Shown piece by piece: positions 13,560 to 37,801 of a stretch of DNA of 64,000 nucleotides. The first letter of the stretch is position 1; every line of letters starts with the position of its first letter. The position numbers and the translations under genes are program-made. This DNA comes from Fimbriosthenelais zetlandica (lineage: Eukaryota): assembly GCA_977030845.1 (NCBI GenBank), contig OZ365113.1, forward strand, positions 17,670,001 to 17,734,000, written 5' to 3'. The notes beneath the pieces are model-generated. The model saw only the letters and a program-made list of their open reading frames with translations. It had not been told where the DNA came from and made no database searches.

Positions 13560-15710
13560 CTATCTTAAAAATCCAACCCTCTCTCCCTTGTTTAATAGCT
13601 TCTCGTCCTCCTCTAACTTGAGCCGGACTGATTTATTTAGAGCCATTCCTACACGTCTGCCACACTAGAAATGTGAAAGAATCATACAGTATAAGTATCG
13701 TACAGTACGGTATAAAATACAATAGTCCCGACACAACAGCGCATATCTATATCCCCAGAAATTTTAAGTAACATAACCTGTGATTATTTAGGGGTAAAAA
13801 CCTGACAACGGTAGCGTAGAGTTACATACCTCCATCATATCATATATACTATCTGGATCTAGACTGCCCACTCCTTCTTTGTTAATGGCAGTCACGGTTC
13901 CCTGTTCAGTGACTCCCATCATTAAACTGCGGAAAAAAAGTAGTATCTATTATCAGGAGATATTCCTCAGTGCTCGCCAAGAATATTAAATGAAATTATC
14001 AAAATAACAGATTCTTAAATGAAAACTGCCATTGTATACATGTATAGGGGAAAAACTTTACCTTGCTACGGAACAAGCCTCTTCTTGCATTGAAGCATCC
14101 ACTACATGATTCATTCCAATCTACAAAGTAAAGAAACTTCTCATAAACACAACCATGGTCAGCATTAAATATAGCACTGAGATGAAAGTGAATAGGACCT
14201 ATACTCATCATAACTAAAATGTTTAAAAATGTTTAAATTCTTCGACTTACTTTGTTTAAACTGACTGTGCAAGGTGCCTTCGTTGTATCAATCCTGATGC
14301 AATTGTAAGGATCATCTGACAGCTCCAGCTCCATATATCCAGTCTCGCCTGATGTAACTGTCACATTAGGTATTCTGAAAGGAATCATTTTATTCAATTT
14401 ACATCAATATTCAGATATCAATCAATGGGAGTAGAAGATATATTGGCAGCTGTTTATTTTTCAATAATAATAATTTTCACTAAAAAAATTTTAAAAGTCA
14501 CTTACTGGGTATTGTAAAGTGCACATTTCACGGCTACTGATGCAGCATCAAACAAAGTTCCTCCACACTCAAGTATCTGAATAACAGAACGATATCAAAA
14601 AGGACTAAAAATGTCCCTCTGAGAATATAATTCAGTGTTTCTCCCTTGCAGAAATAGTTTTCTGTTTATCTGACTTAGAGAGTAGCTGGTATACCCGAGG
14701 TAAAATGACAAAATAATATCATCTTAATTTGTAAAATAAAACCATACCAAAATGTCCACATACAGGACCCAGCATTGTTGCCTGGGGATGACACACAGAC
14801 TCTGAAGGTCCAAGCTCTGCTGATTGTCATACATCCTGGCAAAAACGTTACTGATCTGCTGCGCCAGTTCTTCACCGCCTCGACCCTCAAACTTTGGTGT
14901 GGCATTAGCAGAGCTACAATAAATGGTGTATTTACAATTTAGTATAGGAATGCAGTATAGATATTTTATAGTTTTGTGATATAAACTTTTCCCCTCTAAC
15001 TGTAGTGTAAAGTACAGCGTATGGATTTTTTTTAAATTAGATTAAATGATCCTAAGATAATATATTCTCCTCCGAGTCCTCAAACATACCAATCAACAAA
15101 GAATTCCAATCTGCCTTCATTGGGACGATCAGGTAAAGGATCACCAAGTTCTGCTTTAACACCGACCAGTATATCTGTGTGGGACTGTAATCAGAAGTTG
15201 AAAACCTTAAAAATACACTGTATAAGCAAAAAAATCAAACAAATCATTTAAAATAAATAGACCTGACCTATTATGCCTTTAGCAAGTTTAGGCTTTAACT
15301 GTTTAAGCCTACTTACTAATCTTACTCTCGCTGAACCACTGCTATTTGACACGACATCTTTTTCTATTTCAATCGCACGAAAATCCTCACATCCTCGACC
15401 ATCGATACGTAAGTTATCCTGAATGAAATAGTAAAATATTAAACATGAATAGGTAATGCCATTGGTAGGCCTATAGGCTATACTATGCCAAGTTCTACAT
15501 GCATCTGCGATTGATGAAAACCTCTATTATCGCTCACATCCACTTGGCGATGAAAATTAAGGGTGGACCATAAATAATATTGGCTTTAAGAGAAATAAAT
15601 TTTGACCACAATAGCTTTTATATCTAAGGATGACATATATTTGTTTTCTTTACCTGAACTCCGTGCAAAATAAAAGTTCTTTCGGCCTCACTCAACAGAA
15701 TCTCAGCCAT
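13560..15710 (-). CDS. EXOSC7: Exosome complex component RRP42; 9 coding exons
   Basis: MAEILLSEAERTFILHGVQ|DNLRIDGRGCEDFR...|SHTDILVGVKAELG...GRLEFFVD|CSANATPKFEGRGGEELA...WVLYVDIL|ILECGG.LFDA.S.AVK.AL.NT|...SDDPY...|IG.NHVVDA.MQEEAC|...GSLDPDSIYDMME|...RVGFLR*; TAG at 13560-13562. Confidence 0.96.
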
Positions 15711-16076
15711 GCTGCTGGTACAGGAAGTAGCATCTGTGTACACAATACGATGGCCCAAATGTACCAAGGCTTAAACTGCTAAATTGCAAAATATAACCAT
15801 ATTTTAAAATTTTTAACGCATCTGATATAATTTAGAAAAACACTTTGTGAAGTATAGGTTACTATTTGATGAAATTTTCTCGTTTCTGTAGAATATATTG
15901 AACATATTCTATTTCAACCTTTTGGGTACCGTACTAAATTCACTCAGAGCACAATTTCTGATGACGTTTATCACATGTGCGCTGGGTTGACTGAAGAAAT
16001 TTAGCGACGGTGCTTAGGATTTTCTCGGACTATGGGCCTTTTCTGTTGAAATTGGAGGGTATAATCGTAAAAAGAT
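15711..16076. promoter_or_regulatory. Bidirectional promoter region and inferred first exon of the zDHHC gene, ending AAAAAGAT|GTAAGT
   Basis: EXOSC7 ATG at 15710 (-); perfect plus-strand donor GTAAGT at 16077-16082 preceded by AT (16075-16076). Confidence 0.6.
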
Positions 16077-19000
16077 GTAAGTATGAGGAATGTTTTAATT
16101 GCGTTATAAGTGAAATTACCCGATTATTTTAATATGTATGATTAAATCGGTCATACTGGATTTGTTCCTGGTCCGGTGCTGACCCGAGACCGAAGGCGAA
16201 GATGAAGTGCCGAACTTGTCGGTCTGGCCTTGTCGGCCTGCACGATCGCTCATGCATGTTGAGTTGTGTTGATGTTGACACGATTCCCTTGTTAACGCCC
16301 ATGGTGTGACACGTAGTTGTAGTCTCGTAGTGTCCCATGTGAATTTCTTGGAGTCCCAGAGAAATTATATAATGTACTAGCTTTGAAGCTTTATATTGAC
16401 TGACACTGTCATTTCCGGCAGTAGTACTCGTAGTAATAATAGTACGGTACCCTACAATTGCCATGACTGAGATGGAGGTGTGACTCCTGTCAGTGTCAGG
16501 TGTATGAAATTCATGGCCCAGTTTTTAAAGTCCCTATGTCTATGACTATTAGGTATTCTTTGCAGTTTCTAAATAGGGAAAATGAAAGTAACATTTCAGT
16601 GTAGAATGCTGCACAATTATTAAACATAGGCCTACCGTACCAGTAATTAAACATGCAAGAAAAGTCCAACTGTATTATTAAAAGAATATTTAATGATGTT
16701 AAGACCATACGTTTAAGTGTGTTTTTGATCATTTCTCATGCGACACTCACAGGAAAGATCGATTTGTTTGAGATACCTGGTTGCATTTGATAGGCTTAGA
16801 TTCCTATTACCGGTATCTATTATTAAAATATAATGAGTATTGAAATGTCTAGTTTGGCACTGACCTTTGAAGCTTTCTCATGAGCTTTTCTGATATGAAA
16901 ATCAGAAAAAAATAAGGAAATAAGATTGCATACAGAAATTCTTGTGTTTCCCTCTTGTTGTCTATCTTGCTGTGAATATGCTATGTTTTTATGATATTGT
17001 TACTGAATTGTTAGTCCTAGATGTGTGCACGCTGACAATACTGCTTCTACTAACAGGATACCTCTCCACTCTCTCGATAAATAATTATTTTTTGTTGAGA
17101 CATTGCGCATGTTCATGTAGTTGCAAGCCTTTCAATTAATTTTTTTCCATTGTTCCCAGTGCCCTGTGATCATTCAGTATCATGAAGCGAACACAGTACG
17201 TGTACCGGTATCAGCATTGATACCGATTGTACTCGTATATTTAATATATCGCACTTAATGATAATATACCGTAAATATGATAACATATATTCCCAACAAA
17301 AAAACATCACACATGAAGAAGAGAAAATGGGATGCAACATTCACGCTTTATCCACGGGGATGGGATAAATAGAACTAACATTTGCAACAGTGATAGAGAT
17401 TCTATTCTTATTTCAAGTCTTAGTTTTGTTGCATGCAACCCTTTCAGTGGAAATACCCGCATTTTGGAACCCGGCTCTGGCTTAGCTCAAATGTGTGTTT
17501 TATTTAAATATGTATTGGCTTCTATATGCCAAATTCTTTGAATGTGTTGGAGACATTTTTTTATAGGCACACAAGCAACCAGTTTTATAGCCTCGATTTT
17601 CGAGTGCTTTTTTAACATTTGTAAAGAGAAAGCGGGAAGGGCTGTGTGGTGGGACGGCATCTAATGTTTCTATGTGTTTGTGTCCATGTTCCAGGACCCT
17701 GGGTTCTGAACAGGGTGGGACCAACGGTACCACGGGTCCAGTGATCCGCACCTTCAAGTCAAGTCGCCAGGGTGCGGGCGAGATCCCCGACTACCAAGAC
17801 GCCATAGCACTGATGGACTGTACGCCTTTTTGGCGGAAACTTGGCATTCGCTGGTCCATTTGCCAGCGTGTCTGGTTCGTGAAGGATGTCTGTGGTCTAA
17901 TTTGTGCCCTCTTCACCTGGGGCCTCCTCCTCTATGCTGAATATGTCATCACTTTTGTGATGCTCCTCCCTTCCCCTGACACTCTTCATTCCCTTGTGAA
18001 TGGAATCATGTTCCAAGTTTTAATTTTTCTCGCCATAGCATCCCATCTTCGAACAATGCTAACTGATCCGGTAAGTGAGCCCCAAAAGTGCATCCAAGTG
18101 ATGTTGATTCTAGTCTGTGTTTCTCCATGCGCTAGCCCGTTTATAGCTCAATGGTTATGGACCCCTGAATGTATATATATTGGAGACAAACTGTCCTTCG
18201 TGTTTGTGCTATCTCCAGTACCTTACACTTTACTAATACACTGGCCTTGCTAAAATACTGCTACTCACTGGATTGGCTCTGCTATACCTTTAGGATGCAT
18301 GCTTAGTTTAGAATCTTTAATCCTTACTTCCACAAATCACAAATCCTGAGAATGTTGACCATACCAAGAATTGCCTTCATTTTATCATTCAATTGGATTT
18401 TCTTATTAACTGACCGATGTAGGAAAAAGTCAACCTTGGAATCCCCTCCCCTTGTTGTTAGTTTTTTATATTCTGGAATTCCTGGTTACTGTGGACATTC
18501 TTCCCGGATTTGAGAAGTAGTTGATATAAGTGATGCAAGTGCGAGGGGTTAAATTCTCTTACAGGTAGGTCTCAAGTCTCTTTATTTTCAGCAAGCATCC
18601 TCAGAGTCTGTACCTTTCAGACTCTAAATATTTCAGAGCGTGTTGGTCAGTCAGCACCTACTCCCAGGAGCACTCAAGATGACCTCCCCCATGGTGAAGA
18701 TCATGCCCAAAATTGTTTTCCCTCCTAAATAAATTTTGGCCATTTATCAAAAAATAATAAAAATAAACCTGTCGTGTGCCGTGTTGTTGTTTTCGCCAGG
18801 AGTCTATTAGAAGCACGGTCAACCCAGGCGGGTACAGGTCCGGCTATAAGGGCTTCCTGGTCCAACCCCACAGCGGCCACTACTTATGCACGACACCCCA
18901 TCAACTCTGCCAGTGTGCCTTCTTCAGCTTCCATCCTGCCCGGCAATATGTCAGGCAATCTGTACCCACCAGCTTCAGCCGAGTACCACGATGATCTGTC

Positions 19001-22000
19001 CTACCAAGATAACATCACCATTATGGACTGTAGTGAAGCTGCCAGGATCCTTTTTCCTGGTCGGGTGGAGACCTGTAGGCTCTGGTTTGTACGAGACAGT
19101 GCAGGCGTCTTTGCTTGCGTGTTCACCTGGATGCTCATATTTGGTGGAGAACTGCTGCTCATCTTCGGCATTTTGGTGCACTTCCACAACGGGTACTATG
19201 CATTTTTGCAGGGAACAATCAATATGTTCTTTGCCATGTTAGCAGCTGCCTCACATCTCAAGACCATGTTTACTGACCCGGTGAGTTTTTCTTCTGAGCC
19301 TAACTTTAGTGAGCTCAGAGAATTCTTATAGGAAATATTAATAGGAGATGGGTCACACTCTGGCCCATCTAATCTGGTGTCCTCTGTTATTTTTCGAGTT
19401 AATGTGCCCTGATTGTCTGTTACCACTTGTAGATATCGCCTTGGATAAGATACATTTCTTTTTCTGGCTGGACAACAAATTTCCCTAAAAATACCTGTCT
19501 AGGATTAGGTTCAATTTTATGTTCATGCACTCTCATCTAATAATCCTACTGTAGATAAAATTTTTAAATTCATTACTTAAAAGCATGTAAGATAATGCTT
19601 TATATTTGATATTTTGGACACATGTGTATATATATGCCTGTGTTGACTGAATTATATATGAGCACCAATATCTCACTATGCAAAAGAGATAATGAATGCA
19701 TTCACCCGCACATTGAAAAGCATGTTGAAAATTCTTTCATTTGGCATTAGGCCTAACCGACAGGTTTTTATACCTATGTTAAATTTATTTGAACTTTCAG
19801 TTGGGATTTGTGTAAAGGTTTTAACTTGGTAAATACATGGGAATTGTTTATCATCTGGAGTATTTTTTCCTGCGGGCAATTATCTTGACCAATATCAAAG
19901 ACATAGATCACCATATTATTCAATCAGAGGACTCTTTTAATCAGTATTAGATTTTTTGGCCAAATTAAATACAATAGTAAGTATCGCTCATGCAGAACAT
20001 CAAGATAAGTGAGGAATGACGAACGGAAGATATGTCGCTACTGAAAGGTGTTGCTATTCTTTTACAATATTTTTCTTAAGTATCTCTTTGACTGACGTTT
20101 CCGTCTATGTGAGATCCAAGGTGAGGTCCTTGAAGGAAACTTTCTCGAGGCAAACTTTTACCCTAATTACTCCGACTTTACTTTACTACTACTAAACAAA
20201 GTGAGTGTTTCCTAAACTAGCTGTTAAGGTTTGTAACCCTTTCTAATCAGAAATCCTTGTTATTTTTTATTATTCGCACCTCATATGTTTTCTTAGCACA
20301 TATTTAGCATGCTCTGCATAGTTTAGTCCTTCCCATGGTCTATGTCGGTTTGTCCTATTGAATTGTATTTGGTAAATGTACAACGAAAAATCTCATCTTT
20401 TTGAAGTATCATCGGTAATATTCTGTTGTACCTAATTCTTGTAATCTTTTTCACTTATTAATTAATTTGTGAGATGTCACCCAGCAGAGAGTAGTTGTCT
20501 AAGAAAGGCACCTAGCTGTCCCCTTGTACAAAATATCTTCAATTAAATTTGTAATATGTTTATGATATCTTTGCTAATTGTTATCTATCAATCATTTTAC
20601 AGGGGGCTGTTCCGAGAGGAAACGCAACAAAGGAAAATATAGCTCGCATGGGACTCAAGGAAGGACAAGTTGTCTTCAAATGTCCAAAATGTGTATCTAT
20701 TAAACCTGATAGGGCGCATCATTGCAGGTAAATCAATCTAAGTCATTATCTTGATCATTTCAGTTATCGAGTTGGTTATAATACATCTTGTAGAATCCAG
20801 ATTTCAACGTTTAAAATCAGTTTCCGTGATGCGATTTATGTATGCAGGGGTAGAGAAATCCACTGGTCCGAGGACAAGGACCAGTAATAATTTGCTTTGG
20901 TCTTGTAAAAAAATAACCTTACTAGCCCGATGTCCAGCATGAGATAAATCGGGATAGTAATTAACAGTACACCAGTAGCCAAACAATCTGCTCTATTCCA
21001 TTATAAGGCTTGTGGTCGGGGTTAGGTTTCTTTTTTTTTTTTGTGAAACAGTAATGACAAATTTCAGACAATATATTTTATATTTTACTGGTCCTGACCA
21101 GTGGACTAAAAAATTATTTCTCTACCCCTGGACTATGTTTAGAGGAGTATGTAGGAAGGGATACAATTGTAAAAAGAGATATTCAGGACATAATCAATCC
21201 AATGGCCAGTTGTTGCGAACTTCAAGTTCATTCATGTATTACGTTAGATAAAGTACGGAGGAACTGACCTCTGAGCAAAAGTGAGCTGCTCAATCAGAAC
21301 GTGCTGCCGTCCTGTGGTAGACTGATGAACCATCACTCATCACTATTACTGCACGGCCTCTACCCAGGTCGGGGTTGAACCGTCTGATTTTCAAGACGTG
21401 CACTGTTTTGATTCTAAGACTATGAATCGGACGGTTAAACACAGTAGAATTGGGAAGAACTCTCAAAATAGTGAAAGGCATCTTGCATGTTATGTGACTT
21501 TAACACTGACTTTGAAGCGATTTTGAATTAAGAAATTGATGGTCCAATGTTAGGTTCTGAGTTTGAAATACCACCAGCCATATAGATCTATCAATTGATA
21601 CATTTCTCTTGGGAGTTCCCCTCACACTCAGTTCTTTCTGTGAGAAAATTATATTCCTTTCGCAGGTTATGCCCTCACAGCAGGTGCTTAGCTAGAATAA
21701 TATGCCATACATAATTATATACTTGTAGGATAGGCTACTAGATTCATGCCTTCCTGCCCATTTTAGACTGTCCTTCCTGATCACCTATAAGCAATACACC
21801 GCCATCAAATCTTTTCAGCCAATTGATACAGGGCACTGAGGGCTGCCACAAGCACTTAACATCAGTAAAGCACATGTGACCTTCTTATTAAACACCCTCT
21901 CCTGCTCGTAGAACTATACCCCAGCCCCAAACCGATTATTAGATTGCTTCCGTTGGCCTCCACCAGAGTCCACTGGCGTGCCCATTACTGGCCTCTTAGG

Positions 22001-25000
22001 CGGGAAGATGTATTCCAAAGAGGCAAGGGTCCACACTTGTTATCTGAGTGGGTGGACGTCTGGGATAGGTGGTGCGAGGGGATCACTATAGCAAATTATG
22101 GGAGGAAAATGTCAAAGGCGTGCTCTTTCTCTGGGCAAGCTGTAGGTTAAGTTACTATATGTGGTCTTATTAAAGTGGCGCTACCACCAGCCTCCTCAAA
22201 GCAAAAGGTCATATGACTCTTTTCACCCTCATTTTTGAAGCAGTGCTCTTTTATATAGTTTTGATGTAGAGCCTCCTAACCCTCAAGTTGCTTTAACAAA
22301 CAGGAATATTTGTGTACTGCAGTGTACAATTTCACTTCCATTCCTTAGCATTTCGCCTCCTTTTCCTCTGGGGACCCTCTCAGAGTCTTTGACCTAGAGA
22401 TATGTATATAAAATATTTGGTACTGGTGTGTCAAGTAGGAGTTGGAATTGTCTAAGGAACATTGCAACTACTGCCTGTGAACATGTACAAAGAACTGATC
22501 TGAAAGTTCACCGTTTCATGCAAAGCACGGAAGTTTTGGTGGGATGGATCAGTGTGCTATCCTTTTAGTCCTCCCATAGATCAAGGCATGGCAGAGGCAG
22601 TGGTTATGCTCTGTTAAGTGCACTTAGCCTACTCACTTAATACCAAGTGACAGCCCAAAACACAGCCACAAGGCAATCGACAAATCTAATTCTGCTTTTA
22701 TCCAAATCTAATCTTGCCTTATTGAATAACTTCAGTCACATGAAGCATCTGCCCATTCCATATTCACCTAGCACCCCCTGCTAGGGGTGGGATAGGGTTG
22801 TTTTACTCCAGGTCCCATACCATATTACCTCTTTCCCCCATTTCCCTGAGCCCTCTTCCTGTTGTCACATAGGATATGATAACATGAAAAGCCTCTTTTT
22901 TTAACTTGATGGAACCAGTTTCCTCTGGGCCTGTCGAAAGGAAATAAAGAAATTGCTCGGCATTGCTTCCTATTAAAGAAGTGATATATAGTTGCCACAA
23001 ATAATCAATGCTTCTTATTTTCGGCAGTCACTCCATTTGGAGCATTATGTTCTCCATTCCAGACTTATACTATTGTAGTTAGGAAGTTATAGTTACTTAC
23101 TCATATTACTTATTTACTCCTTTCCTTCTTAGTTAATCTTACTTTCTTTCATAATACTTGCCTCTCTATCACTGTCACAGTGCCCCTATTCCGTCAAACC
23201 TACCCACTCTATTTCCTCGCTTCTCCCCTAGTATTTCCGCTAACTCTTCCTGCTTCTTTTTCTATCGGCCTCCCGCCTGCCTATTATAGTATGTATACAT
23301 TTTGTCCGGTAATATAAAGTGTTCCCATGTTGCTGACCACCTGCTTTCTCTCACTTTCTTAGCTAGTTATTCTCGGTATAAAATCTCTTCACAAAATGCT
23401 CATGAATCACACCTAACAATCCAACTGTCACCTGTCAGTGCTTTTCTACTGAATTCAATTACATTAATAGTGATATGAGCTCCCGAGCTGATGAAAGTTT
23501 AATGCGCTTATCTGCTCCCATATATTTTCACCTTATCGGCCGAATTGCTTTAAATTTGCATGGGTGTTTGGCTGACATTTTGAGAGAGACTTGGTGTGAG
23601 TAGGTGCCTTTAATTAAGGTGCTCAATTCGCCTCACCCACCGAGGCATGAATGACATATCAAGGCTTCAGGGTGATCCAGTAGCATCTCACTGGGTGAGG
23701 CGACTGGATCGCTTTAATAATCGGTCACTCAATGAGGGCTTCTTCAATGTTTTAGAAGACAGCTAAAAGAAAACCCTGAGATAAAAATGGAAAATTGCAA
23801 AAAAGAATTTGAACAAATGAGGTTAATTCGAATCCCCTGAGGCGCGTGTTTTTATTAGCATGCATATTTCATATTCCGGGGTATTGAGTTTCCTGGGTTT
23901 GAGAACTAAAAATGAAGATAAGGGTGTTAAGAAGGGGGTGGGGGATTCGATTTTAATATAAAATTGACGATATTCCCTTGGTATCCCTGCCACTTGATTC
24001 TTTTAACTTTTAAGTCAGCGTGACTGCCGACACAAGTTTATGTACTTTCTGGCTCAGCATGACTGTTGGGAGCCTCAGCAGGTGGTCTTATCAGATAAGG
24101 ATTCTCTCTTGGGTATTCTCCACCTTGGTCCATATCAGATAAGCCTATTGTTATCCCATGAAGCACAGGGAATTGTCAGCACATAGTGGGGTTTCGTAGT
24201 CTACTGATCAAACAATTACAAAATCTTTTCCTTTGCAGATTTGTGTCACTGATACTTAACTTTTATTATGTCTCCTCGGTTTTTAAAGTACCTTGATGTT
24301 ACTCTCCATATATTATTATTTGAATGGAAATATTGCAACATACTGACAGATATATGTGCCTGGATCCTTTTTTAAAATAAACTCATTTGACATGGAGGCG
24401 CCTGGCCTGTGAAGCCTCATCCTCATTTAGGTTAATGATTGGATTAGAAAAAAAACTAATCTGGGAAACGTAAAAATGGCTTCCAGAAATCACCTAGTGT
24501 CAGGACACGTAATGGTCATGGCCTTTCAGAAGTCTTTAAATAATGACAAAATCCTCAATTCCTCTTATTGTGACCGGATTTATGACCAATGAATCCTGTT
24601 AGATGGTTGGACTTTACTGTCAAATATTGAAGTAACGGGAAATTGTCTCCCTATTGCAGACTTTGAGAGAACACTTTCCACAAGGAAATGAAAAGAAGAA
24701 TTCTGCTTGCACGCCAGGCTCAGAAAACAATTTCCTCAATAAAATGATTTTTTTGTTTCAAAGTACACGATCCCTCAAGTCCCTATATGTCAACTCTCGA
24801 GATGTGTACAGGGATTGTGCATTTGCCAAAGCCAAGGGATCTGTACACTGCCCTCCAGGCCTTAGGCACTAAGGGAAGTAAATATTGGATTATTTCATCT
24901 TTGCATTTTGCAACATAAAGTGTCATGACTGTTTTCCTTTATTTGACCCGGTCACCAATAGGTTTTGGATACATACGTACTATATATGCGTTTCTAAGAA

Positions 25001-28000
25001 AAGTGTTATTGATCAAACTTTATTAGTCCATGGGCCCTGGAATGCAAACAAGTTATTTGGGCTCATTTGGTGGTAAAAAGCACTGGGAACATTCAAGGGG
25101 CATTTTTGCATCAGCACCAGTTGCAACTAGATGGAAGTTGGCTGCGGGACTGATGGAGGTGAGCAGGAAAATAATGGATCCCTCAGTTGGTAATTGGGTT
25201 TGGGGATTGGTGATAACAGAGGAACGGATAAGATAGGTCTACAGGTCTACAGTCTTCACAGACCTGTCTATTCACAGGAGCAGTAGTCAGTTACCATGGC
25301 AACATAGGGGCCACACTTAAAGGGCTAGAGCATCAAAGGCTCATATTGCTTTGATTAATCCGTATCAATCACTCATTGGCTTAATCTTCATAAATCTTTT
25401 GACCAGTCTTTATAGACCGCTAGATAATCCCAGGAGGAAACGGTTATAACCTTGTATTTTACGTCCATTTCCCCTTGCTAGATTGGTACGGATATGGTGT
25501 ATGGGGTAGTCGTATAAATACAGATATATAATCTGGATGTGAATGATAGCTTTGTATGTAATAACAATGTCTGGATATTGGAGGAATAAATCTCCCTATC
25601 TCCCCACCTAGTCAGATAACTGTGGCTCCCCTATTGTCATAACATCATGTCACGACATAATTATCCCATGTATTAGGCACATGGGACTGTTGGAGAGTTA
25701 TTTGCTATGTAATATTGGAACATTTATAGAGGTATTCTAGATGGTCCAGCGTGTCTGGACAGCGGCCACCATCCTGTGAGAATGCCAGCTAATACCCTGC
25801 TATTGATTTTTAAGTCACCCTATCTCCCACAATTTCCATTGTCAGGAAACCAATATGTTGTCAGCAAAAAACTCCAGCTGTTTCATATCACGGGATATTT
25901 TCAATTCAGCTGCCCTTGGAAAGTATAATCACTACCATGTTCTGATCCTGAATTGGACATGAACATATCGATAATGATATTAAATGTATGACTATATTCT
26001 TGGATTTTCAATGATGGCCTCTTGGCGGAGAATAAGGAATGAGTTATCCAGAAGTGTCCAAATTATAGGGCTATCCTTGCTGGCCATAACTGCCAAGAAT
26101 CTCCCATCAGCGCCCATCTATTGGTGTTAATGGGACAGTTACCCCCTGATGTACCCTCTACATACCACCTCATATCGTGTAATCCACCCACGCTTTGTTG
26201 TTGAGACGGAGAGTTCATAATTGGCTCCATAGGCATATAATGTACATAATATAGACCTACTTGTGAGGTGTATTGGTGCTCATATGCATTGTTTTGCCCC
26301 TGTGGTTTCTATAATAAATCAGCCCCACGAGGGGAAAAAACAATTACAAGCAGTTGGCCTATACCTTCCGTTCCCTCCGACTTTGTTTTTTCTGTACAAT
26401 GAATTATCAGTAGGCCTATATATTTATAAAATATAAAGCTGGGAGGCTTTTATTCACAAGAGTACAGTTTTTGCCTTCTACTTTCCATTGAGCAAATTGA
26501 TCTTTATGGGAATGTAGGGACTGTGCCCACCTCCTAAGCGAGAGCATCTCCCTTATGTCCTCGGGGATATGACCCCATCTGTATCCCCCTGACCTGTCTC
26601 CGCTTTAGACATCCAGCTACCAAACATTTACTGCGTCTCTCTAGAGTTCGGCCAGGGAACTATATGGCGTATGTACTCTCACTATTAATTGCCTTGTTTG
26701 AGGCACGTCTTCTCTCCTTGATTAAAAGCCTCTGCCTCTTCTACCACAGGTCTACGTGTTTGTCCTTCCCACGCTATGTATTGGCCCGAGGCAATAGTGA
26801 CTTATGTTAACTCTATGAGACACCAGTTACAAAGCAGATAGAATAGGCCCACATATAAGAAGTGACAATGACAGGTCTTTTAGTAACCATGGCTAAATAT
26901 GGGTAACTGTGACAAATAGCTGCACGCTCGATTTATTTGGCGCTGGATTTTACACGTTGAATAAAAAGATTTATTTAGGCGTTATGAAAATATTGCTATT
27001 CGATGGATGTCATCCATATGATTGATTGTTTGGCCAAAATGTAAATATCATTGATAAAGGATGTCAAATTATAAAAGACAAGATAAATGGCAAATGGATA
27101 CTCCCATTTTTCATGTGGTCTGATTTCCCCCAACACATCAGATATACTGGTCATTGATGCACCACTCCTGAGGGGTGGGCTGCTCTTGAATGGATGGCTT
27201 TCTAGTGACTGATTGTTTATTGCTGCGTTCTGAATACCATTATTTAGGATGTCAAATGTTGTTTCACACCGTGAGATATTTCCCATGCAACAGTGTTCTG
27301 CAAAGATAAAATCACAAGGGAAGCCTTCCATGGGCTCTGAAAGGCTGTGTAAGCACACATTGATCATTCTCACTAGTAAAACACTACCTGCAGTGCTCTT
27401 TTAAAGCAGAGTCTCATTACCATCATTTGAAAACCTCTTTATAGTCTTATCGAAGTTTTCTTTATCTTTTCGGCGATTGTAACTTGGGGGATATTTTGTG
27501 AAAAATGATCAGAAGAGAAGACTGTATACCAGAGTGTGCTGGCTGGCCTATCACTATGTGGTACAAGATGGATGTCCAGCTTGGCATATGGGATAAGGCC
27601 TTCCTCCTCCAAGATCCCAATATTTGATCAGAAACAGTAGACGTCGGTAGTAGGGCCAACTTATTGAACGGGAAGACGCTCCATCCCACTCCTGGTATTG
27701 AATTTGTAGCCTATGACACCCTCGTGAAATAAATATACAGAATATGAAGAGTCCGGAATATAAAATGGCCCTTCATCACCTGCTCGATACAATTTCAAGG
27801 TCGGATTCTTTCGCTGGCATCAATTCTTATAAGCTATATACATGAGAATTCCTTTAAACATTGCTGCGGCAATCTGTCATCCCAAATATATTAAAGCTGA
27901 GGGTATCAGACATTGGATATTGATTCTGTGGTTCTTGTTATTCTGGTTTGAAAGTCTGTTTAACCAAATCATTGATAGGCCAGTTAATGTGGATGCCAGA

Positions 28001-31000: not shown

Positions 31001-34000
31001 CTTTTTGCCATTGCCATGTCATATAAATCCTAGCTAAATTGAGCTCCATTTGCCATCGTCAGTACAGGTTATTTCCATCCAGAAAATGTAGGAGCATTTG
31101 AGCCTACAACTGGGAATACCAAATCCACATCTAACCTCCTCTCCTGCTTGACCTTTGACCTGGCATCTGATCTAGTTCCTCCCATCACATACTGTAGTCA
31201 CCCTACCTAATCACTCTCATCACTAGAAACCAATATAAAATATACACTCGGGAGAGCTGGAATGTTGAATATTTAACGCCATGTTTATAAATTGAAAGCT
31301 TTCTATACAAATACTGCATCGATGTCTGCAACCACTTAGTGTTTTTACCCATCACCTTGTAAAATATTCAGCTATTAACTTTGAATGATTCATGTTTTTC
31401 TCGGGTAACTTTGCCTTATTTACGATCAGTTCACTTCGCAAAGTATCCTTTGAAAGGGAAATTGTCCAGGCAGTTTTCTGCGTGAGGTCTGTCGATATTG
31501 ACAGACAGAAGGTAATGAGCAGGATTTTCAACAGGCTCCTCTGCTCGAGCTTCTCCATATTTCAACGAATCGACTCTCTCTGGTAGTGTGGGTGCACGTC
31601 ACCACCATGGTGAAAGAGAAAAAGAGATGTAATGAGCCCACCTTCTATTGTCTTTGCTCCCTCTTGTCGAACGTATTGATGTTCTCTGTATGAGAGTTTC
31701 AAGGCGGGTTTTACGACCTTTCCTGTTACCGGTAGATGTCTGCTTCAGTTTTAGATACTTCAGCATTACATCCATATTTTACATATTGTACACACTATAT
31801 ATCAGACATTGACATTCACATACCCTGTCTAGGGACCGTGTACCCCTGCAGCATACATTAGAGATATGTCCACTGACTACCGAACTATTTATGCAGAAGA
31901 TAATCCACTCATCTCTGCTGCATCACATTAAGACTGGATGTTTTTTCCATCAGTGCCTTTCCAATGACCCCAGATGTTTTACAGCGGGACTATCAGATTT
32001 TCAATTACATTATGCAGTCATGTATGCTGAAATTGTTGCCCTTCTCTATCCCCCATAATATTGAGGCAGCGTTTTTGCCTGACGTTTCGAATTACATGCC
32101 AACAATATTGCAGATTGTAGATAACAGGGGCTATAACTATGACCTTCCCTTGCCTCTCCTTTCATCAGATTTCACAGCCAGCACTTCTGAATTTCCGTAT
32201 CTGTTACTTTCCAATCCCAATTTGAAACCTCTCTTTTGCTTTTCTCGCTTTGTAAGAAAGTCTTCAGTGTTCTTTCTATACAGTTCACCTCTCGGAGATG
32301 GCCTTTCTATACATGTATCTCCTACAGATGTGGATCAGAACCTTTGCTGAGAGGTCATTATACTTCTCGCCCGGTAAGAGGAACTTCTTGCTATCCCTAT
32401 CAGGCATCTATTGACAAGCAAGCCTCCTCAGGACAGACAATCCATTCATTCTATTGGCTCTTTCCCTGCTAGCCCCTCCCAGGGGGGCATACGTGGTGAA
32501 ATCCCCGATTGCTTCCATACACCGCCTTGAGAGCGACAGACTCCTATAGTCCGTGCCAGAAAATGAAGCTGATTCGATTTACAGCCCCCCTCAGGGCCCT
32601 TCCCCCGACTCCTACACCCATCCCCACCCTCAATCCCACCCCCTCGCTTGGTCACCCTTATTTGCTAAGCGAGGAGAGGTTTCATCGACAAATACAAAAG
32701 CCTCAGGGCTATCAAGAGACATGAATGCATCTATGTAGCCATCAATCTTTTTACCCTGATTTCCCGTTGGTATCTAATAGGGAGATGACATGGGGGACAT
32801 GCCTCGAACCTTCAACATTGTCAACAATGTGTCCATTCCTCATATTTCTCTTTTCGCAAATATTTCATGGTTTGCGAGTGGACCTGTTTATCTCTGATGT
32901 TTGTTACTCAGTCATGAGCTCTAATTAAGTTTCAAACAGCATTTGATGAGAAGTATTTAATAAAGCACATAGTGATGCTAATTTACCGTCAAATGAGCAC
33001 AATTCTCGGGACCATTATACGAAAATCAGTTCAGTCAACTCGTTATGAGAAGACTTTTTTTATGGCTCCCAGGGAATTATCTCATGAGGCTAAGACGGAT
33101 TTCGAGGGTAATTATGACAAAGTAGATTCGTCCCATCTCTCTCCCCGCTCGCTGATTCCTTATCTCCTCTTGATTCTCTTCTCTCATCTTTTTTTCGGGG
33201 GGAAGTCCCTTAATTGAGGTATAGTTGCTAAGGTGACAGTACATGGCATTATCTACACAGGCCCGGGAGACTTCATGCCTGTGAACAGCTCCCTTGATTC
33301 CCATTATATACAAATATAAGGTGTAAGCAGACATAAGACTTCCTGGGATGCTGTTCGTATTCCAATTAAAGGTAATTGGGAAAGCTGCATCCAGGGAGAC
33401 GAGAAGGCAAATGCCATAGGAGATTTATATCTGCCATACCATCAGTGTAATGTATTTTATAACCAGACAATATGCAACTTGGACATTCTCTGTATTTTTT
33501 CTTTGTTTTTCAGTGTATGCAGGCGATGTGTAAAGAAGATGGACCATCACTGTCCATGGGTCAATAACTGCGTTGGAGAGAACAACCAGAAATTTTTCAT
33601 GCTCTTTACAGTAAGTTTCCAAATTGTTAATGTCAGTAAGCCTTTAACAAAACCAGTGTAACAACACCAGTGTAACTACTCCCATGTGATCTACGTATAA
33701 TCTGCAGTGTAATTTACATTGTGAATGATTGCCAGTACATTATTAAAACCAATTGAACATTCGTCATTCCAGCTATATATCTGTATCATATCTTGCCATG
33801 CACTCTACATGGCCATACATCACTTCGTTAATTGCATCGGGAGAGATTGGAAAGGTGGGTACATCATTCTTGTTCTTCTATTTAAAATAAGTTATTCTGT
33901 AGAAGGGAACTATGATACTTCACTCTTGCAGTTTAGGCAAGGAATTGTATGAAGACAATGTTTTTGAAGACAAGCATTTTTACAGTAGAAACTGGAATGT

Positions 34001-37000
34001 ATGTTCGTTTCACTTATTTTTTTCTGTGCACTCTGAAATGCTTTAGTACTTTCACTTTAGGATTTATCACCAGACATTGTATTACCATTGTCTTTCAGAC
34101 TGTACATCCTACTCACCTGCAGCAACAACCATATTCCTCATCTTCCTATTGTTTGAAGCGCTTCTATTTGGCATCTTCACCGCCATTATGTTTGGCACTC
34201 AACTGGCTGCCGTATGCAGTGATGAAACGGTAAGGGCATTGATTCTTATTTTTATGTGCATGTGGGAATGAGAGTATAAGTGTATTGTATGTTTGATTAT
34301 TATTCACATAAATATATGACAGGCAAGTATGGTGTTCCCTATTTTCTTACTGAATAGGTAGGTATATCTAGCTGGCCTTTTGAAAGATACTTGTCCCTAC
34401 AGATCCTGTTTCTAGGTGTTTTTGGGGCTCTGGTTTTTTTTTGAACCACTGACATTGCCACGAGATTCTGGACTGTGGTTCCCAACATGGAAACCTAGAA
34501 ATGATCGATTGTGAATACAAATGGGCACGGCCCTTAAGGTTACTTCTCATCGATTTTTGAGCATAAGCAGAAATTACTAACCTTTGATGTTTTTTACAAT
34601 GACTTTGAACTTTCGATTTCTCCTCCAAGCCATATATTTGAACAAATAGTGTTTTTTTAAAGTTTGAAATGCTTCTTCATAACGAGTGTGCTTTGGCGGT
34701 AATTATATCTTCTCTTAATGACAGATATTTTGATCTGTCTGATGAAAACTAAGAAAATAATCACGTCCTTTGTCGACCACAAAGATCCCTGGTCCCAATA
34801 AATAACTTTACCATTTCAAATGTCTTTCAATCCACCCAAAAAATCAAAGAACTAATTAAAGACCAGTCAAGTTGGTCTTTGTGTCGTTTTTAAAGTGTAT
34901 ATGAAATGCAAAGAACGTGTGGAATCACTGGTTCTTGCTAATTAAAGCACTGTTGTTTTTCTTCCCAATAAAGCGCACCACTATTGGGAAAGCTTCCTTC
35001 CATCGATTACCTTGTTTGCTTTGGTTATTAGGCTGTTAGACATGGGAGGAAGCTAGTGGGCAGGAACTCCTCTGTCTCGGGGTTGTTTCCTCTTACAGAC
35101 ATGTCACCTTTTAGGGTGCCAAACAACCTCTGCTAGCGTAGGCAGTGCCAACGCTGTTTTGGAAACTGGTCTTTTTATCTCCAGGCATGCAGTTTTCCTT
35201 TCCATTTGGACTAATTATATGTCGTAACGATGCTGTCCAAGTGGTCATTCAGGCTTTGAAAATTTAATGAGGGTGGTTTTAATATTTTTTTTGTTTCCGT
35301 CTGTGATTCTGACGTCACATCCTCTAGTCGTTAGACACATGTAGTACCAGAAGTCATGCGATGTTGAGTAGCAACGGTCCACTATCTCTCTGAACAAAAA
35401 CCTCGTTAGAGTAGTTACCTATTCTACTCTGTTCTACCTACGTTATCTATCCATTCATTCAAAATCAGATGTGCATGACGCAAGCTCCACAGTTGGTAAA
35501 AAGCTAGGAACGCTAAGTTTCGAACCCCGACTACTCCAGTACATGCGAGTACCTTAATACCCACTGGTCAACCTGAAATTTCTTCGACGTACCCTATATA
35601 TCTGAATTGGGTGCCTGTTTCTAAAATTATAAACGAATCCCTGTGGTAGACATATTCAGTTACAGAAATCATTTGAGGCCATACACGTCTGTCACATGAC
35701 TGAATATTCTACCAGTTTGACCATTTCGTGCTGATTCAGTTGCCTCCTTGGGTTTCATATAAAAGCATTGGTATGAATGCATATATATCTCTGTGGCGAA
35801 GCGACACGATCACCTCTAGCAACACACCTCGTTATGGACAGACTACCAGTCTTTTGGCCTAATGGCATTTTTTTTCCTGAATGGTCAACAGCAATGTATA
35901 CAGTGAACCCGGACACCCAAGTATATTTGCCTGACGATAATGGTTGCTGCCTCACGCGCAGCTCCATTATAATATCATAATGTCACTGTGTAATAGGATG
36001 ACAGCCATGTATGCCTCTGCTGTCCCATCCTCACCCTCTATCCATGAATTATTACCCAGCTTGATGTTGCTCATTTCGCCCTCACAGTGCAATGATCTTG
36101 TGCATGACCCTTTATCCCCCATCCATTAAATCATCGTTTAAAATTGTCAATGCATTATGGTGATGTTAGGCCAAAACGACTTTCAACTGACAACCTCATA
36201 TCACATTAGTACATTTATGGTAAATATTCAGCGAGGGAAAGTTTTTAGGCATAATATTTTTTTTAATCTGTGTTGTATTGTATCGTTATTTTTGAGGCAT
36301 TTTTGTCCCAAGAAGTAACCTTTTGATAATTTGATACTTATGAAGACATTGATGCTGAAATGTAGTACCTGTGTATGTATCATTTTTTTTTTTGAAAAAA
36401 AGCGAAATCGGTAGTTGTCTAACCGAAGCTACATATTATCTGTACAATAGGAGAAAGAAAAATATTTTCCTTCTTCCGAAAGACACCACTCCCCTGAAAA
36501 CTACGATAATATTAGATTTGAAGAACTGGCTTTGCTGACAACCTGCCAAAATGGGGCAGCCATTAGGCCCGCCAAACCAACCAGTCACCTTGCGCATGCC
36601 AAGCATGACACAAATTCAATGCAATTACCACATGACCCAGCTTGACCCATACCCTGGTCTTACTGGGTTGCCAGGCAACTTGTCATTATGCAGCATCCCT
36701 ATATCAACCATTCTCCTGCACTGAATACCTTCCTACAATCTCATTGTCCTGTAATCTGTGCTCCTCTAAGGCTGTAGGTCGTCTTGGGAGAATCATAACA
36801 TGCACTTCCGGCTTTTCTATTGATCTGTTGATAGAATAAATTCCAGCAGACAAGCTGTACTTTGTCTCTTGTTTCATATGTTGTCGAGTCTGACCTTTTC
36901 TTAGAGCCTTTAGGTCTCTTAGTTCACATCACCATACTGTCATTCTCATGTCCCCCTTCCGCTTCTTTTTAATTGCTTTTGCTCAGAATGGATCTTATTT

Positions 37001-37801
37001 AAGGCAGATTGCCTCAATAACTCGGGACTTGGTAGATGACTGTAATTAGTTACCGCCTTCCCTGAGTCCCACTTCTTTCACTGGGATTCAATGATGTTTG
37101 CTTCACTGCTAGTGCCAGTGGCCTGAACGAAATAATTGTCTTGGAGACTCTTTTTACGAATCTTATTGCTCTGGGAAGCAGACAAAAGTTAGTTTTTGTA
37201 TGGATGGGACATGTTGAATGGCTTTTGCTCTTAAGACTTTATTGCAAGTGTTTTACTGCCTCATCTTTTCTGCCTCCAGCACATGCACCTATACCCCTGC
37301 CTGAATGCATGTATTGTGAAGAGAAAATGTTTTTTTGAATATTGTCTGCATGGAGTATTATGTGCACTGCTTATTATTGGTTCTCTTATTGGTAGAAAAC
37401 GTCTTGGGTTATAAGGTACTTTTCTAAATCGGTCTACATCTTTGGTATAGTGTCTTATCATAATGGTTGATGGTGGTGTTGGTAATTTGTCTTCACACTG
37501 AATATGGCACTTAACTTTCACAGCTGGATCATGATTTCATGCCTAATTCAGCATCGCCTTTTGTGTTGTATCTCTCTTTAAAACATGACGTCCCCGAAGC
37601 TCATCTTTTTGCGAAGACTCAACGCCTGCCTATTTTTTTCAGGGAATAGAACAGTTGAAGAAAGAACAGGCAAGGTGGGAGAAGAAATCTCGGTGGATGA
37701 GTATAAAGGCAGTGTTTGGACATCCTTTCTCCTACCGTTGGTTCTCGCCATTCCACGTGGCTCATTTTAGCAAAGAGGAGGTGGACCATTACACTGTTTA
37801 A
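16075..37801 (+). CDS. ZDHHC3: DHHC palmitoyltransferase of the ZDHHC3/ZDHHC7 type. Exons: AT 16075-16076; alternative exon A 17695-18070 or B 18800-19280; then 20603-20727, 33514-33610, 33773-33854, 34099-34229, 37643-37801 (323 or 358 aa)
   Basis: ...[10 protein letters not shown]|[11 protein letters not shown]...[16 protein letters not shown]|[33 protein letters not shown]|...|...[13 protein letters not shown]|GIEQLKKE...[15 protein letters not shown]; exon boundaries correspond to remembered human ZDHHC3. The 5' end (split ATG) is inferred, and ZDHHC3 vs ZDHHC7 is not resolvable. Confidence 0.9.
17695..18070 (+). CDS. zDHHC alternative exon A (N-terminus + TM1 + TM2, canonical-like)
   Basis: Acceptor gtgtccatgttccag|G; encodes ...[34 protein letters not shown]...NGIMF...[11 protein letters not shown]; donor GTAAGT. 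Confidence 0.88.
18800..19280 (+). CDS. zDHHC alternative exon B (diverged duplicate of exon A)
   Basis: Acceptor gttgttgttttcgccag|G; open for 160 codons; [23 protein letters not shown]...[11 protein letters not shown]; donor GTGAGT. Confidence 0.82.
22800..23560 (-). mobile_element. Possible highly decayed non-LTR (LINE) RT fragment
   Basis: Purine-rich minus strand; [17 protein letters not shown] (23058-23008) loosely resembles the K(A/S)PGPDGxxxE motif, followed by ETGS..KKEA; many stops, so the match is weak. Confidence 0.25.
25290..25303. promoter_or_regulatory. RFX X-box-like motif GTTACCATGGCAAC in the large zDHHC intron
   Basis: 13/14 match to the palindrome GTTGCCATGGCAAC; function unproven. 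Confidence 0.35.

What the first reader, a model, noticed from the sequence alone, without database searches (positions are those of the whole stretch)
16075..19280. Split start codon (AT|G) completed by either of two duplicated, mutually exclusive exons in a zDHHC palmitoyltransferase
Seen in the sequence: the exon upstream of a perfect GTAAGT donor ends in AAAAAG-AT. Two downstream exons each begin with G after a good acceptor and end at ...TDP with a phase-0 donor. AT+G gives ATG-ACC-CTG... (A, 376 nt) or ATG-AGT-CTA... (B, 481 nt), both in frame with the shared DHHC core. A and B are clear paralogues ([15 protein letters not shown]; [20 protein letters not shown]; WFVKD/WFVRD; [22 protein letters not shown]). 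Including both shifts the frame to a stop at 18992-18994, and skipping both gives a stop after 13 codons. Established: vertebrate ZDHHC3/7 encode this region in a single exon. Inference: one gene makes two enzymes with swapped N-termini and TM1-TM2, with exclusivity enforced by frame/NMD. I know of no description of this arrangement.
Basis: partly seen in the sequence, partly recalled or inferred. Interest (0 to 1): 0.85.

Follow-up and report, generated by a model that had tools for sequence, protein, structure and literature searches.

The report
Palmitoyl-enzyme gene with two swappable starts
This probable annelid worm's ZDHHC3-type gene (a fat-attaching enzyme) holds two old, still-selected versions of its first coding exon; each completes a start codon begun in the exon before, so one gene very probably makes two enzymes, though RNA proof exists for only one version.

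Summary
Exon 1 ends in AT at 16076. Exon A (17695-18070) and exon B (18800-19280) each start with G after a good acceptor, end at ...TDP, and are 3n+1 long. Using both, or neither, gives an early stop.

The reading is well supported by comparison.
- A second species keeps A, B and exon 3 in the same order.
- Both exons are under purifying selection at saturated synonymous distance.
- Coding constraint in B starts at its first codon, upstream of any ATG that B itself could supply.
- An mRNA contig from a closer relative joins an exon 1-like leader ending in AT directly to exon A.
- Three more unannotated genomes carry the same A-type, B-type, exon 3 tandem.
- A-type and B-type exons form two separate, strongly supported clades.

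Two points temper the novelty. The split AT|G start is older than the exon pair: the public Lineus longissimus gene model already has it, with one exon. Mutually exclusive exon pairs are also a known kind, and this scan has noted several others in this genome, though not this one.

No RNA was found showing exon B joined to exon 1 or to exon 3. Verdict: real, a new member of a known kind, moderately interesting.

The parts
15651..15710 (-). First coding exon of the head-to-head neighbour, an EXOSC7/RRP42-like RNase PH gene. It bounds the shared promoter region.
   Evidence: tblastx against the Solemya locus. The same neighbour is annotated with RNase_PH domains in Solemya and Lineus. The element is conserved in L001.
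15711..16076 (+). Interval that must hold the start of transcription and exon 1, a 5' leader whose last two bases AT (16075-16076) are the first two bases of the start codon. The donor GTAAGT is at 16077-16082. The 5' end of the exon is not defined.
   Evidence: The relative's mRNA leader ends ...CAAGAT. L001 has ...CAAAAT|GTAAGT 240 nt from its EXOSC7 start.
16032..16049 (+). Possible 5-codon upstream ORF in exon 1, out of frame with the main start. It is relevant only if transcription starts upstream of it.
   Evidence: Read from the sequence.
17695..18070 (+). Exon A (376 nt). It supplies the G of the ATG, a 60-aa cytosolic tail, and TM1, loop and TM2 of the canonical ZDHHC3 type.
   Evidence: It is 82% identical in L001 (dN .11, dS 1.1) and 91% identical in mRNA contig L005. 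It falls in the A-type clade.
18800..19280 (+). Exon B (481 nt). It supplies the G of the ATG, a 95-aa Ser/Thr/Pro-rich tail, and a divergent TM1, loop and TM2 (the B type, with signatures LWFVRDxAG, GGE and HFHNGYYA).
   Evidence: It is 65% identical in L001 and under purifying selection. It falls in the B-type clade (100/99 support).
18992..18994 (+). Premature TGA that is reached if exons A and B are both included.
20603..20727 (+). Shared exon 3 ([11 protein letters not shown]...HHC), the start of the cysteine-rich domain.
   Evidence: It is 98% identical in L001.
33514..33610 (+). Shared exon 4, carrying the DHHC catalytic motif.
   Evidence: Pfam PF01529, E=5e-17.
33773..33854 (+). Shared exon 5 (TM3).
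34099..34229 (+). Shared exon 6 (TM4).
37643..37801 (+). Shared last coding exon, with the TAA stop at 37799-37801.

Best explanation
This is a ZDHHC3-type S-acyltransferase gene transcribed from a promoter shared head-to-head with an EXOSC7-like gene.

Its short first exon is almost all leader and ends in AT. An old phase-2 intron follows. The next position is occupied by two tandem, anciently duplicated exons, A and B. Each begins with G and so completes the ATG. Each encodes the cytosolic N-terminal tail plus TM1, the lumenal loop and TM2. Each ends in phase 0 at ...TDP, just before the shared cysteine-rich DHHC domain.

Splicing exon 1 to A gives a canonical 323-aa enzyme. Splicing exon 1 to B gives a 358-aa enzyme with the same catalytic domain, TM3 and TM4 but a different front half. 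Both exons are 3n+1 long, so mRNAs with both or with neither hit an early stop. Such mRNAs should be non-productive and presumably cleared by NMD, which leaves one exon per productive mRNA.

Shown here: the anatomy, the homology, the frames, conservation of the pair, selection on both exons, and exon 1-A splicing in a relative. Inferred: exon 1-B and B-exon 3 splicing, NMD, and any functional difference between the two enzymes.
For: - Anatomy and frames.
- Homology of A and B.
- A second species (two haplotigs, L001 and L011) keeps A, B and exon 3 in order. Both acceptors are conserved, both exons start with G, and both are 3n+1 long.
- Selection: exon A has dN .11 and dS 1.1. Exon B has dN .23-.27 with dS saturated, and third-position differences of .62 against .19 at second positions.
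- Coding signature in B from its first codons: SLLEAR against SVLEAR with 3 synonymous changes. The conserved block upstream of B's first internal ATG has 10 synonymous against 4 replacement differences. No in-frame ATG lies upstream of B's acceptor.
- mRNA contig L005, from a relative at dS about 0.44, joins a 28-nt leader ending in AT to exon A. It encodes a 323-aa protein starting MTLGSEQGG.
- Three further genomes (L012, L013, L009) have A-type, then B-type, then exon 3, with all exons 3n+1.
- In trees, all B exons sit on one side of a 100/99 branch and all A-type exons on the other, including vertebrate, arthropod and mollusc ones. The sub-topologies are parallel.
- The EXOSC7-like start lies only 366 bp upstream of the exon 1 donor, so exon 1 sits at the shared promoter.
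- Only one copy of exons 3-7 is in the window.
Against: - No transcript or annotated protein with a B-type N-terminus joined to the DHHC core was found. The best 120 hits of each of two 5.8-billion-protein searches held none, nor did the 150 representatives listed for exon B. The one listed representative that runs a weakly B-like exon into exon-3-like sequence (P0008) is contiguous in the genome, so it shows no splicing.
- The relative's A-type mRNA contig runs unbroken through the A-exon 3 junction. B-containing mRNA was therefore rare or absent in that sample.
- TM2 of exon B falls below a simple hydropathy threshold.
- No conserved docking or selector RNA pairing was seen, so nothing beyond the reading frame is known to enforce exclusivity.
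- Several contigs have a B-type exon followed by exons 3 and 4 but no A-type exon in the 2-6 kb available upstream. In some lineages B may therefore belong to a separate gene.
Confidence: 0.75

Rival explanations
1. A and B are alternative first exons. Exon B (and perhaps A) has its own promoter in the preceding intron, and translation starts at an internal or intronic ATG (18948 for B, 17672 for A). The AT|G join is then incidental.
For: - In-frame ATGs exist at 17672, in the pyrimidine tract before A, and at 18948.
- L001 also has an in-frame ATG in the tract before A.
- In L012 and L013 each exon carries its own ATG within 1-7 nt of the acceptor.
- No exon 1-B junction was observed.
Against: - The relative's mRNA is spliced exactly at the A acceptor to a leader ending in AT.
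- Conservation upstream of both exons stops about 14 nt before the AG, as expected for acceptors rather than coding sequence.
- The part of B upstream of 18948 shows a clear coding signature. It has no ATG available in the genome upstream of it.
- L009 likewise has no Met before TM1 in either exon.
Confidence: 0.1
2. Exon B is not used to make protein. It is either a decaying duplicate or a poison exon whose inclusion, together with A, triggers NMD to tune expression.
For: - Including A and B together gives a premature stop.
- No B-type protein or mRNA is in the databases searched.
- B evolves about twice as fast as A at the protein level.
Against: - A 160-codon frame stays open across saturated synonymous divergence, with dN/dS well below 1 and a 3:1 excess of third- over second-position changes.
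- The B-type protein signature is conserved in at least 6 species and in 18 database clusters. A poison exon needs no conserved protein sequence.
Confidence: 0.07
3. The two exons belong to two different genes, or the tandem is an assembly duplication.
For: Some contigs show a B-type exon followed by exons 3 and 4 without a nearby A-type exon.
Against: - The window has a single set of exons 3-7.
- A and B are only 38% identical, so they are not an assembly duplicate.
- The same tandem appears in independent assemblies of five species and in two haplotigs of one of them.
Confidence: 0.02

Closest known systems
Mutually exclusive exon pairs made by tandem exon duplication, as defined for prediction by Pillmann et al. 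2011 (PMC3228551). Textbook cases such as PKM exons 9/10, FGFR2 IIIb/IIIc and insect Mhc are cited from my own knowledge. Other pairs have been noted by this scan in the same genome.
   Same: The exons are adjacent, homologous and in the same phase, between shared exons. Double inclusion or double skipping breaks the frame. Both copies are under selection and the pair is older than the species.
   Different: The pair sits at the very start of the coding sequence, and both copies complete a start codon begun in the preceding exon. The lengths differ by 35 codons, all in the N-terminal tail. The gene family (zDHHC) has no described case in the papers I could search.
Lineus longissimus 'palmitoyltransferase ZDHHC3-like' gene model (P0281; GCA_910592395.2, locus L027)
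   Same: It has the same neighbour (an RNase PH gene, head-to-head). Its start codon is split in the same way...cactAT|gtaagt, then ttgcag|G GAG GAA. It has the same phase-2 intron and the same ...DP|GAVP exon boundary.
   Different: It has only one N-terminal exon, of the A type. No B-type exon was found in the gene or within 10 kb on either side.
Vertebrate ZDHHC3 (GODZ) and ZDHHC7 paralogue pair
   Same: They are two Golgi-type enzymes with the same catalytic core and different TM and tail sequences. Exon A groups with ZDHHC3 orthologues.
   Different: In vertebrates the diversity comes from whole-gene duplication; here it comes from duplication of one exon. ZDHHC7 was not among my sequences. 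That it is A-like is my own knowledge of its sequence, not a test made here. B-type exons form a separate clade from the ZDHHC3 orthologues I included.
Alternative first-exon clusters with one promoter per exon (UGT1A, clustered protocadherins; my own knowledge)
   Same: Variable 5' coding exons are joined to constant downstream exons.
   Different: In those clusters each variable exon has its own promoter and ATG and no acceptor. Here both exons have conserved acceptors and, in this lineage, no usable ATG of their own.

Membership tests
zDHHC S-acyltransferase, ZDHHC3/7 subfamily | DHHC cysteine-rich domain (Pfam PF01529) with an intact DHHC motif | tested here: met
   Exon 4 peptide matches PF01529 at E=5e-17, 62.6 bits against a cut-off of 28.7, and holds [13 protein letters not shown].
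zDHHC S-acyltransferase, ZDHHC3/7 subfamily | Four transmembrane helices, with the DHHC domain between TM2 and TM3 | tested here: inconclusive
   Simple hydropathy finds TM1-TM4 in isoform A. In isoform B, TM1, TM3 and TM4 pass, but TM2 falls below the 1.6 threshold although it aligns with TM2 of A. No structure was predicted for B, because the spliced product has no reference.
zDHHC S-acyltransferase, ZDHHC3/7 subfamily | Orthology to ZDHHC3 | tested here: met
   All best named hits of the near-identical relative P0152 are ZDHHC3 or ZDHHC3-like. The head-to-head EXOSC7-like neighbour is shared with Solemya and Lineus.
zDHHC S-acyltransferase, ZDHHC3/7 subfamily | Protein S-acylation activity of each isoform | not testable with these tools
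   Needs expression and an acylation assay.
Mutually exclusive exon pair (tandem exon duplication) | Neighbouring exons on one strand between shared exons, homologous in sequence | tested here: met
Mutually exclusive exon pair (tandem exon duplication) | Same splice phases at both ends, with a length class that makes joint inclusion or joint skipping out of frame | tested here: met
   The exons are 376 and 481 nt, both 3n+1, with stops at 18992 and after 13 codons. The same holds in four other species.
Mutually exclusive exon pair (tandem exon duplication) | Similar length (WebScipio default: within 20 aa; PMC3228551) | tested here: not met
   The exons have 125 and 160 codons. The 35 extra codons lie in the N-terminal tail, and the TM1-TM2 core aligns with two single-residue gaps.
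Mutually exclusive exon pair (tandem exon duplication) | Both copies maintained by selection | tested here: met
Mutually exclusive exon pair (tandem exon duplication) | Each exon found in mRNAs, and never both in a productive mRNA | not testable with these tools
   Only an A-type mRNA of a relative was found. No reads of this species are available.
Split start codon | The upstream exon ends in AT before a GT donor, with no in-frame ATG after the last in-frame stop | tested here: met
   Stop at 16015, AT at 16075-16076, then GTAAGT.
Split start codon | The spliced mRNA shows ATG formed across the junction | tested here: inconclusive
   Shown for exon A in a relative's mRNA contig and built into the Lineus gene model. 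For exon B it rests only on selection upstream of any other ATG.

The most novel reading that the evidence does not exclude
The B-type cassette (tail plus TM1-TM2) is an ancient second front half of ZDHHC3. It is older than the annelid radiation and perhaps as old as bilaterians, and was lost in most lineages. By replacing two of the four helices that line the acyl-chain pocket, together with the cytosolic tail, it would give the same catalytic core a different fatty-acid preference, partner set or location. On this reading these animals set S-acylation specificity by splicing.
Probability: 0.3. Interest if true: 0.65.

Novelty: new member of a known kind. Interest (0 to 1): 0.45.

Why it matters
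- zDHHC enzymes choose both their fatty acid and their protein substrates partly through their membrane helices and tails. A natural pair that holds the DHHC domain, TM3 and TM4 constant and swaps only the tail, TM1 and TM2 is a ready-made experiment on what the front half contributes.
- It shows that enzyme diversity reached in vertebrates by gene duplication (ZDHHC3 and ZDHHC7) can be reached by exon duplication elsewhere.
- It is a practical warning for annotation. No gene model among the hits I could see contains the B-type exon. Exon finders that require first coding exons to start with ATG (PMC3228551) would miss a pair that only completes a split ATG.

Tried and rejected
- **Literature.** Searches for mutually exclusive exons with ZDHHC or palmitoyltransferase, and for split start codons, gave only cancer splicing surveys, nothing, or unrelated single cases.
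- **Full-length or spliced B-type proteins.** The best 120 hits of each of a profile search and a single-sequence search held only A-type full-length proteins. Of the 18 B-type-like representatives, 16 are ORFs that read through the exon into the intron and end DPVS.... The other two are P0008, whose exon-3 continuation is contiguous in the genome, and P0107, a full-length protein that is not truly B-type.
- **'Isoform X2' proteins of Lingula and Haliotis.** These could not be traced to their loci, because only the longest product of a gene is on record.
- **JGI metagenome scan for spliced B-type transcripts.** It returned only genomic contigs.
- **Docking and selector RNA pairing.** Only short AT-rich matches were found, and none is shared with L001.
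- **Chain-length idea.** A weak alignment to human DHHC20 puts Gly (A) against Met (B) at the position after the conserved Trp of TM1. A-type exons of other species have Leu, Phe or Met there, so this is not a consistent A/B difference and I do not rely on it.
- **Pfam.** It has no model covering the A or B peptides.
- **Exon 1 in L001.** blastn did not find it. A pattern search, together with the conserved EXOSC7 exon, located a candidate.
Full report
**What is in the sequence**

The + strand of 15.7-37.8 kb holds one ZDHHC3-type gene with seven coding exons, all with GT-AG introns.
- Exon 1 ends ...AAAAAGAT at 16076, before GTAAGT. In its frame there is a stop at 16015 and no ATG, so it contributes only AT.
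- Exon A (17695-18070, 376 nt) and exon B (18800-19280, 481 nt) each begin with G after a pyrimidine tract and CAG. Each ends ...TDP before GTAAGT or GTGAGT.
- Joined to exon 1, they read MTLGSEQGG... and MSLLEARS... Both continue in frame into exon 3 (20603-20727), the DHHC exon (33514-33610; PF01529, E=5e-17), exons 5 and 6, and the last exon (stop at 37799-37801).
- The products are 323 aa and 358 aa.
- Including both exons gives TGA at 18992-18994. Skipping both gives a stop after 13 codons.
- A and B are 38% identical over the 95 residues that span TM1, the loop and TM2 (E=2e-19).

**Setting**

The first coding exon of an EXOSC7/RRP42-like RNase PH gene lies on the minus strand at 15651-15710, 366 bp upstream of the exon 1 donor. 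The same head-to-head neighbour is annotated next to the ZDHHC3-like genes of the bivalve Solemya velum and the ribbon worm Lineus longissimus. Exon 1 must therefore lie in a short shared promoter region, and A and B are internal exons downstream of it. Earlier notes of this scan call the genome a probable annelid. My named best hits are lophotrochozoans at 60-68% identity, with no close annotated relative. I did not test the annelid assignment further.

**Is exon B a live coding exon?**

Yes.
- A contig from an ENA metagenome assembly (L001) and a 99%-identical second haplotig (L011) carry A (82% aa identity), B (65%) and exon 3 (98%) in the same order.
- Both acceptors and both donors are kept. 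Both exons start with G and are 3n+1 long (376 and 538 nt).
- At this distance synonymous sites are at or past saturation. Exon A has dN .11 and dS 1.1. Exon B has dN .23-.27 with dS not estimable, and differences by codon position of .30/.19/.62.

A neutral 160-codon frame would not stay open across such divergence. B evolves about twice as fast as A but is clearly constrained.

**Where does translation of B start?**

- In the window, the frame of B has a stop at 18726 and no ATG before the acceptor. The first ATG inside the exon is codon 49, at 18948.
- Coding constraint nevertheless begins at the first codon. SLLEAR against SVLEAR carries three synonymous changes.
- The conserved block [19 protein letters not shown], upstream of codon 49, has 10 synonymous against 4 replacement differences, with position differences of 4/1/12.

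This stretch is therefore translated, and its ATG must come from an upstream exon that ends in codon positions 1-2. Exon 1 does exactly that.

**Exon 1 to exon A splicing in a relative**

For exon A there is direct evidence from a relative at dS of about 0.44. Logan contig L005 (run ERR14707600) is a spliced mRNA of 5231 nt that encodes a 323-aa protein 91% identical to A over the exon. Its 5' end reads ...GAAATACGTCAAGAT|GACCCTGGG. The leader resembles exon 1 here and not the intron before exon A.

L001 has ...CAAAAT|GTAAGT 240 nt from its EXOSC7 start.

A weak hint from assembly mechanics:
- L005 holds exactly 28 nt of leader.
- Logan contigs come from a 31-mer graph in which every 31-mer occurs once.
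- 28 nt is what one expects if the leader also continues into another sequence that begins GA followed by a base other than C.
- Exon B here begins GAG, whereas the intron begins GT.

This is an inference, not a finding. The same contig runs unbroken through the A-exon 3 junction, so B mRNA was scarce at best in that sample.

**How old is the pair?**

Three more unannotated contigs from other organisms show an A-type exon, then a B-type exon, then exon 3: L012, L013 and L009. All exons are 3n+1.
- In L009 the A-B intron is only about 67 nt, and neither exon has a Met before TM1. This fits the split start seen here.
- In L012 and L013 each exon has its own ATG 1-7 nt after the acceptor. The position of the ATG relative to this phase-2 intron has therefore drifted between lineages.

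In trees of the TM1-TM2 region, all B exons (6 species; 17 rows in the larger tree) sit on one side of a 100/99 branch. All A-type exons, including vertebrate, arthropod, priapulid, mollusc, brachiopod and nemertean ZDHHC3, sit on the other. The branching order inside the two groups is parallel. The duplication thus predates the common ancestor of these five species. Whether it is older than the phylum cannot be told from an unrooted tree with a long B branch.

Solemya and Lineus have a single A-type exon and no B-type exon in the gene or its flanks. Some contigs have a B-type exon followed by exons 3 and 4 with no A-type exon in the 2-6 kb available upstream. In some lineages B may therefore have become a separate gene, or A may lie further away.

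**What tempers the novelty**

- The split start codon is not special to this species. The public Lineus gene model starts with AT before GTAAGT and resumes ...ttgcag|G GAG GAA, giving MEEVNVGG. The Solemya model has the same phase-2 intron with the ATG nine bases further upstream. The duplicated exons inherited an old intron position, and 'either exon completes the ATG' follows automatically.
- Mutually exclusive pairs made by tandem exon duplication are a well-known kind. Earlier notes of this scan report several in this same genome.
- I found no paper describing such a pair in any zDHHC gene. I also found no annotated protein or transcript with a B-type front half.

**Mechanism and confidence**

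The best reading (0.75) is one promoter, one leader exon, and a choice between A and B. Reading frame and, presumably, NMD remove mRNAs with both or neither. The outcome is two enzymes that share the catalytic domain, TM3 and TM4 and differ in the cytosolic tail, TM1, the loop and TM2.

By weak alignment to human DHHC20, the swapped part corresponds to the first two helices of the membrane domain. From my own knowledge of the DHHC20 structure, those helices help form the acyl-chain pocket. A change in fatty-acid preference or partner binding is therefore plausible but untested. The single-residue chain-length argument does not hold up across species.

Rivals:
- Separate promoters with internal ATGs (0.1).
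- A non-coding or poison exon (0.07).
- Two genes or an assembly artefact (0.02).

**Not done**

No reads of this species were available. No structure was predicted for isoform B, because the spliced product has no reference. The organisms behind L001, L005, L009, L012 and L013 are not identified.

Noticed in passing
window 15651-15710 (-), with further exons near 15311-15418 and 15089-15184 (-): An EXOSC7/RRP42-like RNase PH gene lies head-to-head with the ZDHHC3-like gene, 366 bp from its exon 1 donor. The same pairing is annotated in Solemya (L006) and Lineus (L027). From memory, human EXOSC7 and ZDHHC3 are also neighbours, so this may be a very old bidirectional pair.
   Followed up: partly
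window 16032-16049 (+): A five-codon upstream ORF (ATG GGC CTT TTC TGT TGA) lies in exon 1, out of frame with the split start. It matters only if transcription starts upstream of it.
   Followed up: no
L027 13783-14604 (Lineus longissimus ZDHHC3-like gene): A 68-nt unit is repeated 12.1 times at 98% identity. The unit is the last 57 nt of the TM4 exon plus its GTAAGT donor, so the gene carries about 12 tandem copies of an exon end, each with a donor site.
   Followed up: partly
L005 1-31 (Logan mRNA contig of a relative): The contig starts exactly 28 nt before the exon 1/exon A junction. In a 31-mer graph that is the break point expected if the leader also joins a sequence starting GA plus a base other than C, as exon B does in this window. 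It is a hint of exon 1-B splicing, not evidence.
   Followed up: partly
L009 426-492: In this species the intron between the A-type and B-type exons is only about 67 nt. That is short enough that A-to-B splicing might be sterically hindered, which would be a second way of keeping the exons exclusive.
   Followed up: no
window 20728-33513: A 12.8-kb intron separates exon 3 from the DHHC exon. It holds no ORF longer than 128 aa, and its content was not examined further.
   Followed up: partly
L007 2264-2764 (GCA_013332915.1): A weakly B-like N-terminal exon here runs on into the GAIPRGNAT... segment without the ...DP| intron. That otherwise conserved intron is therefore missing in at least one lineage.
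   Followed up: no
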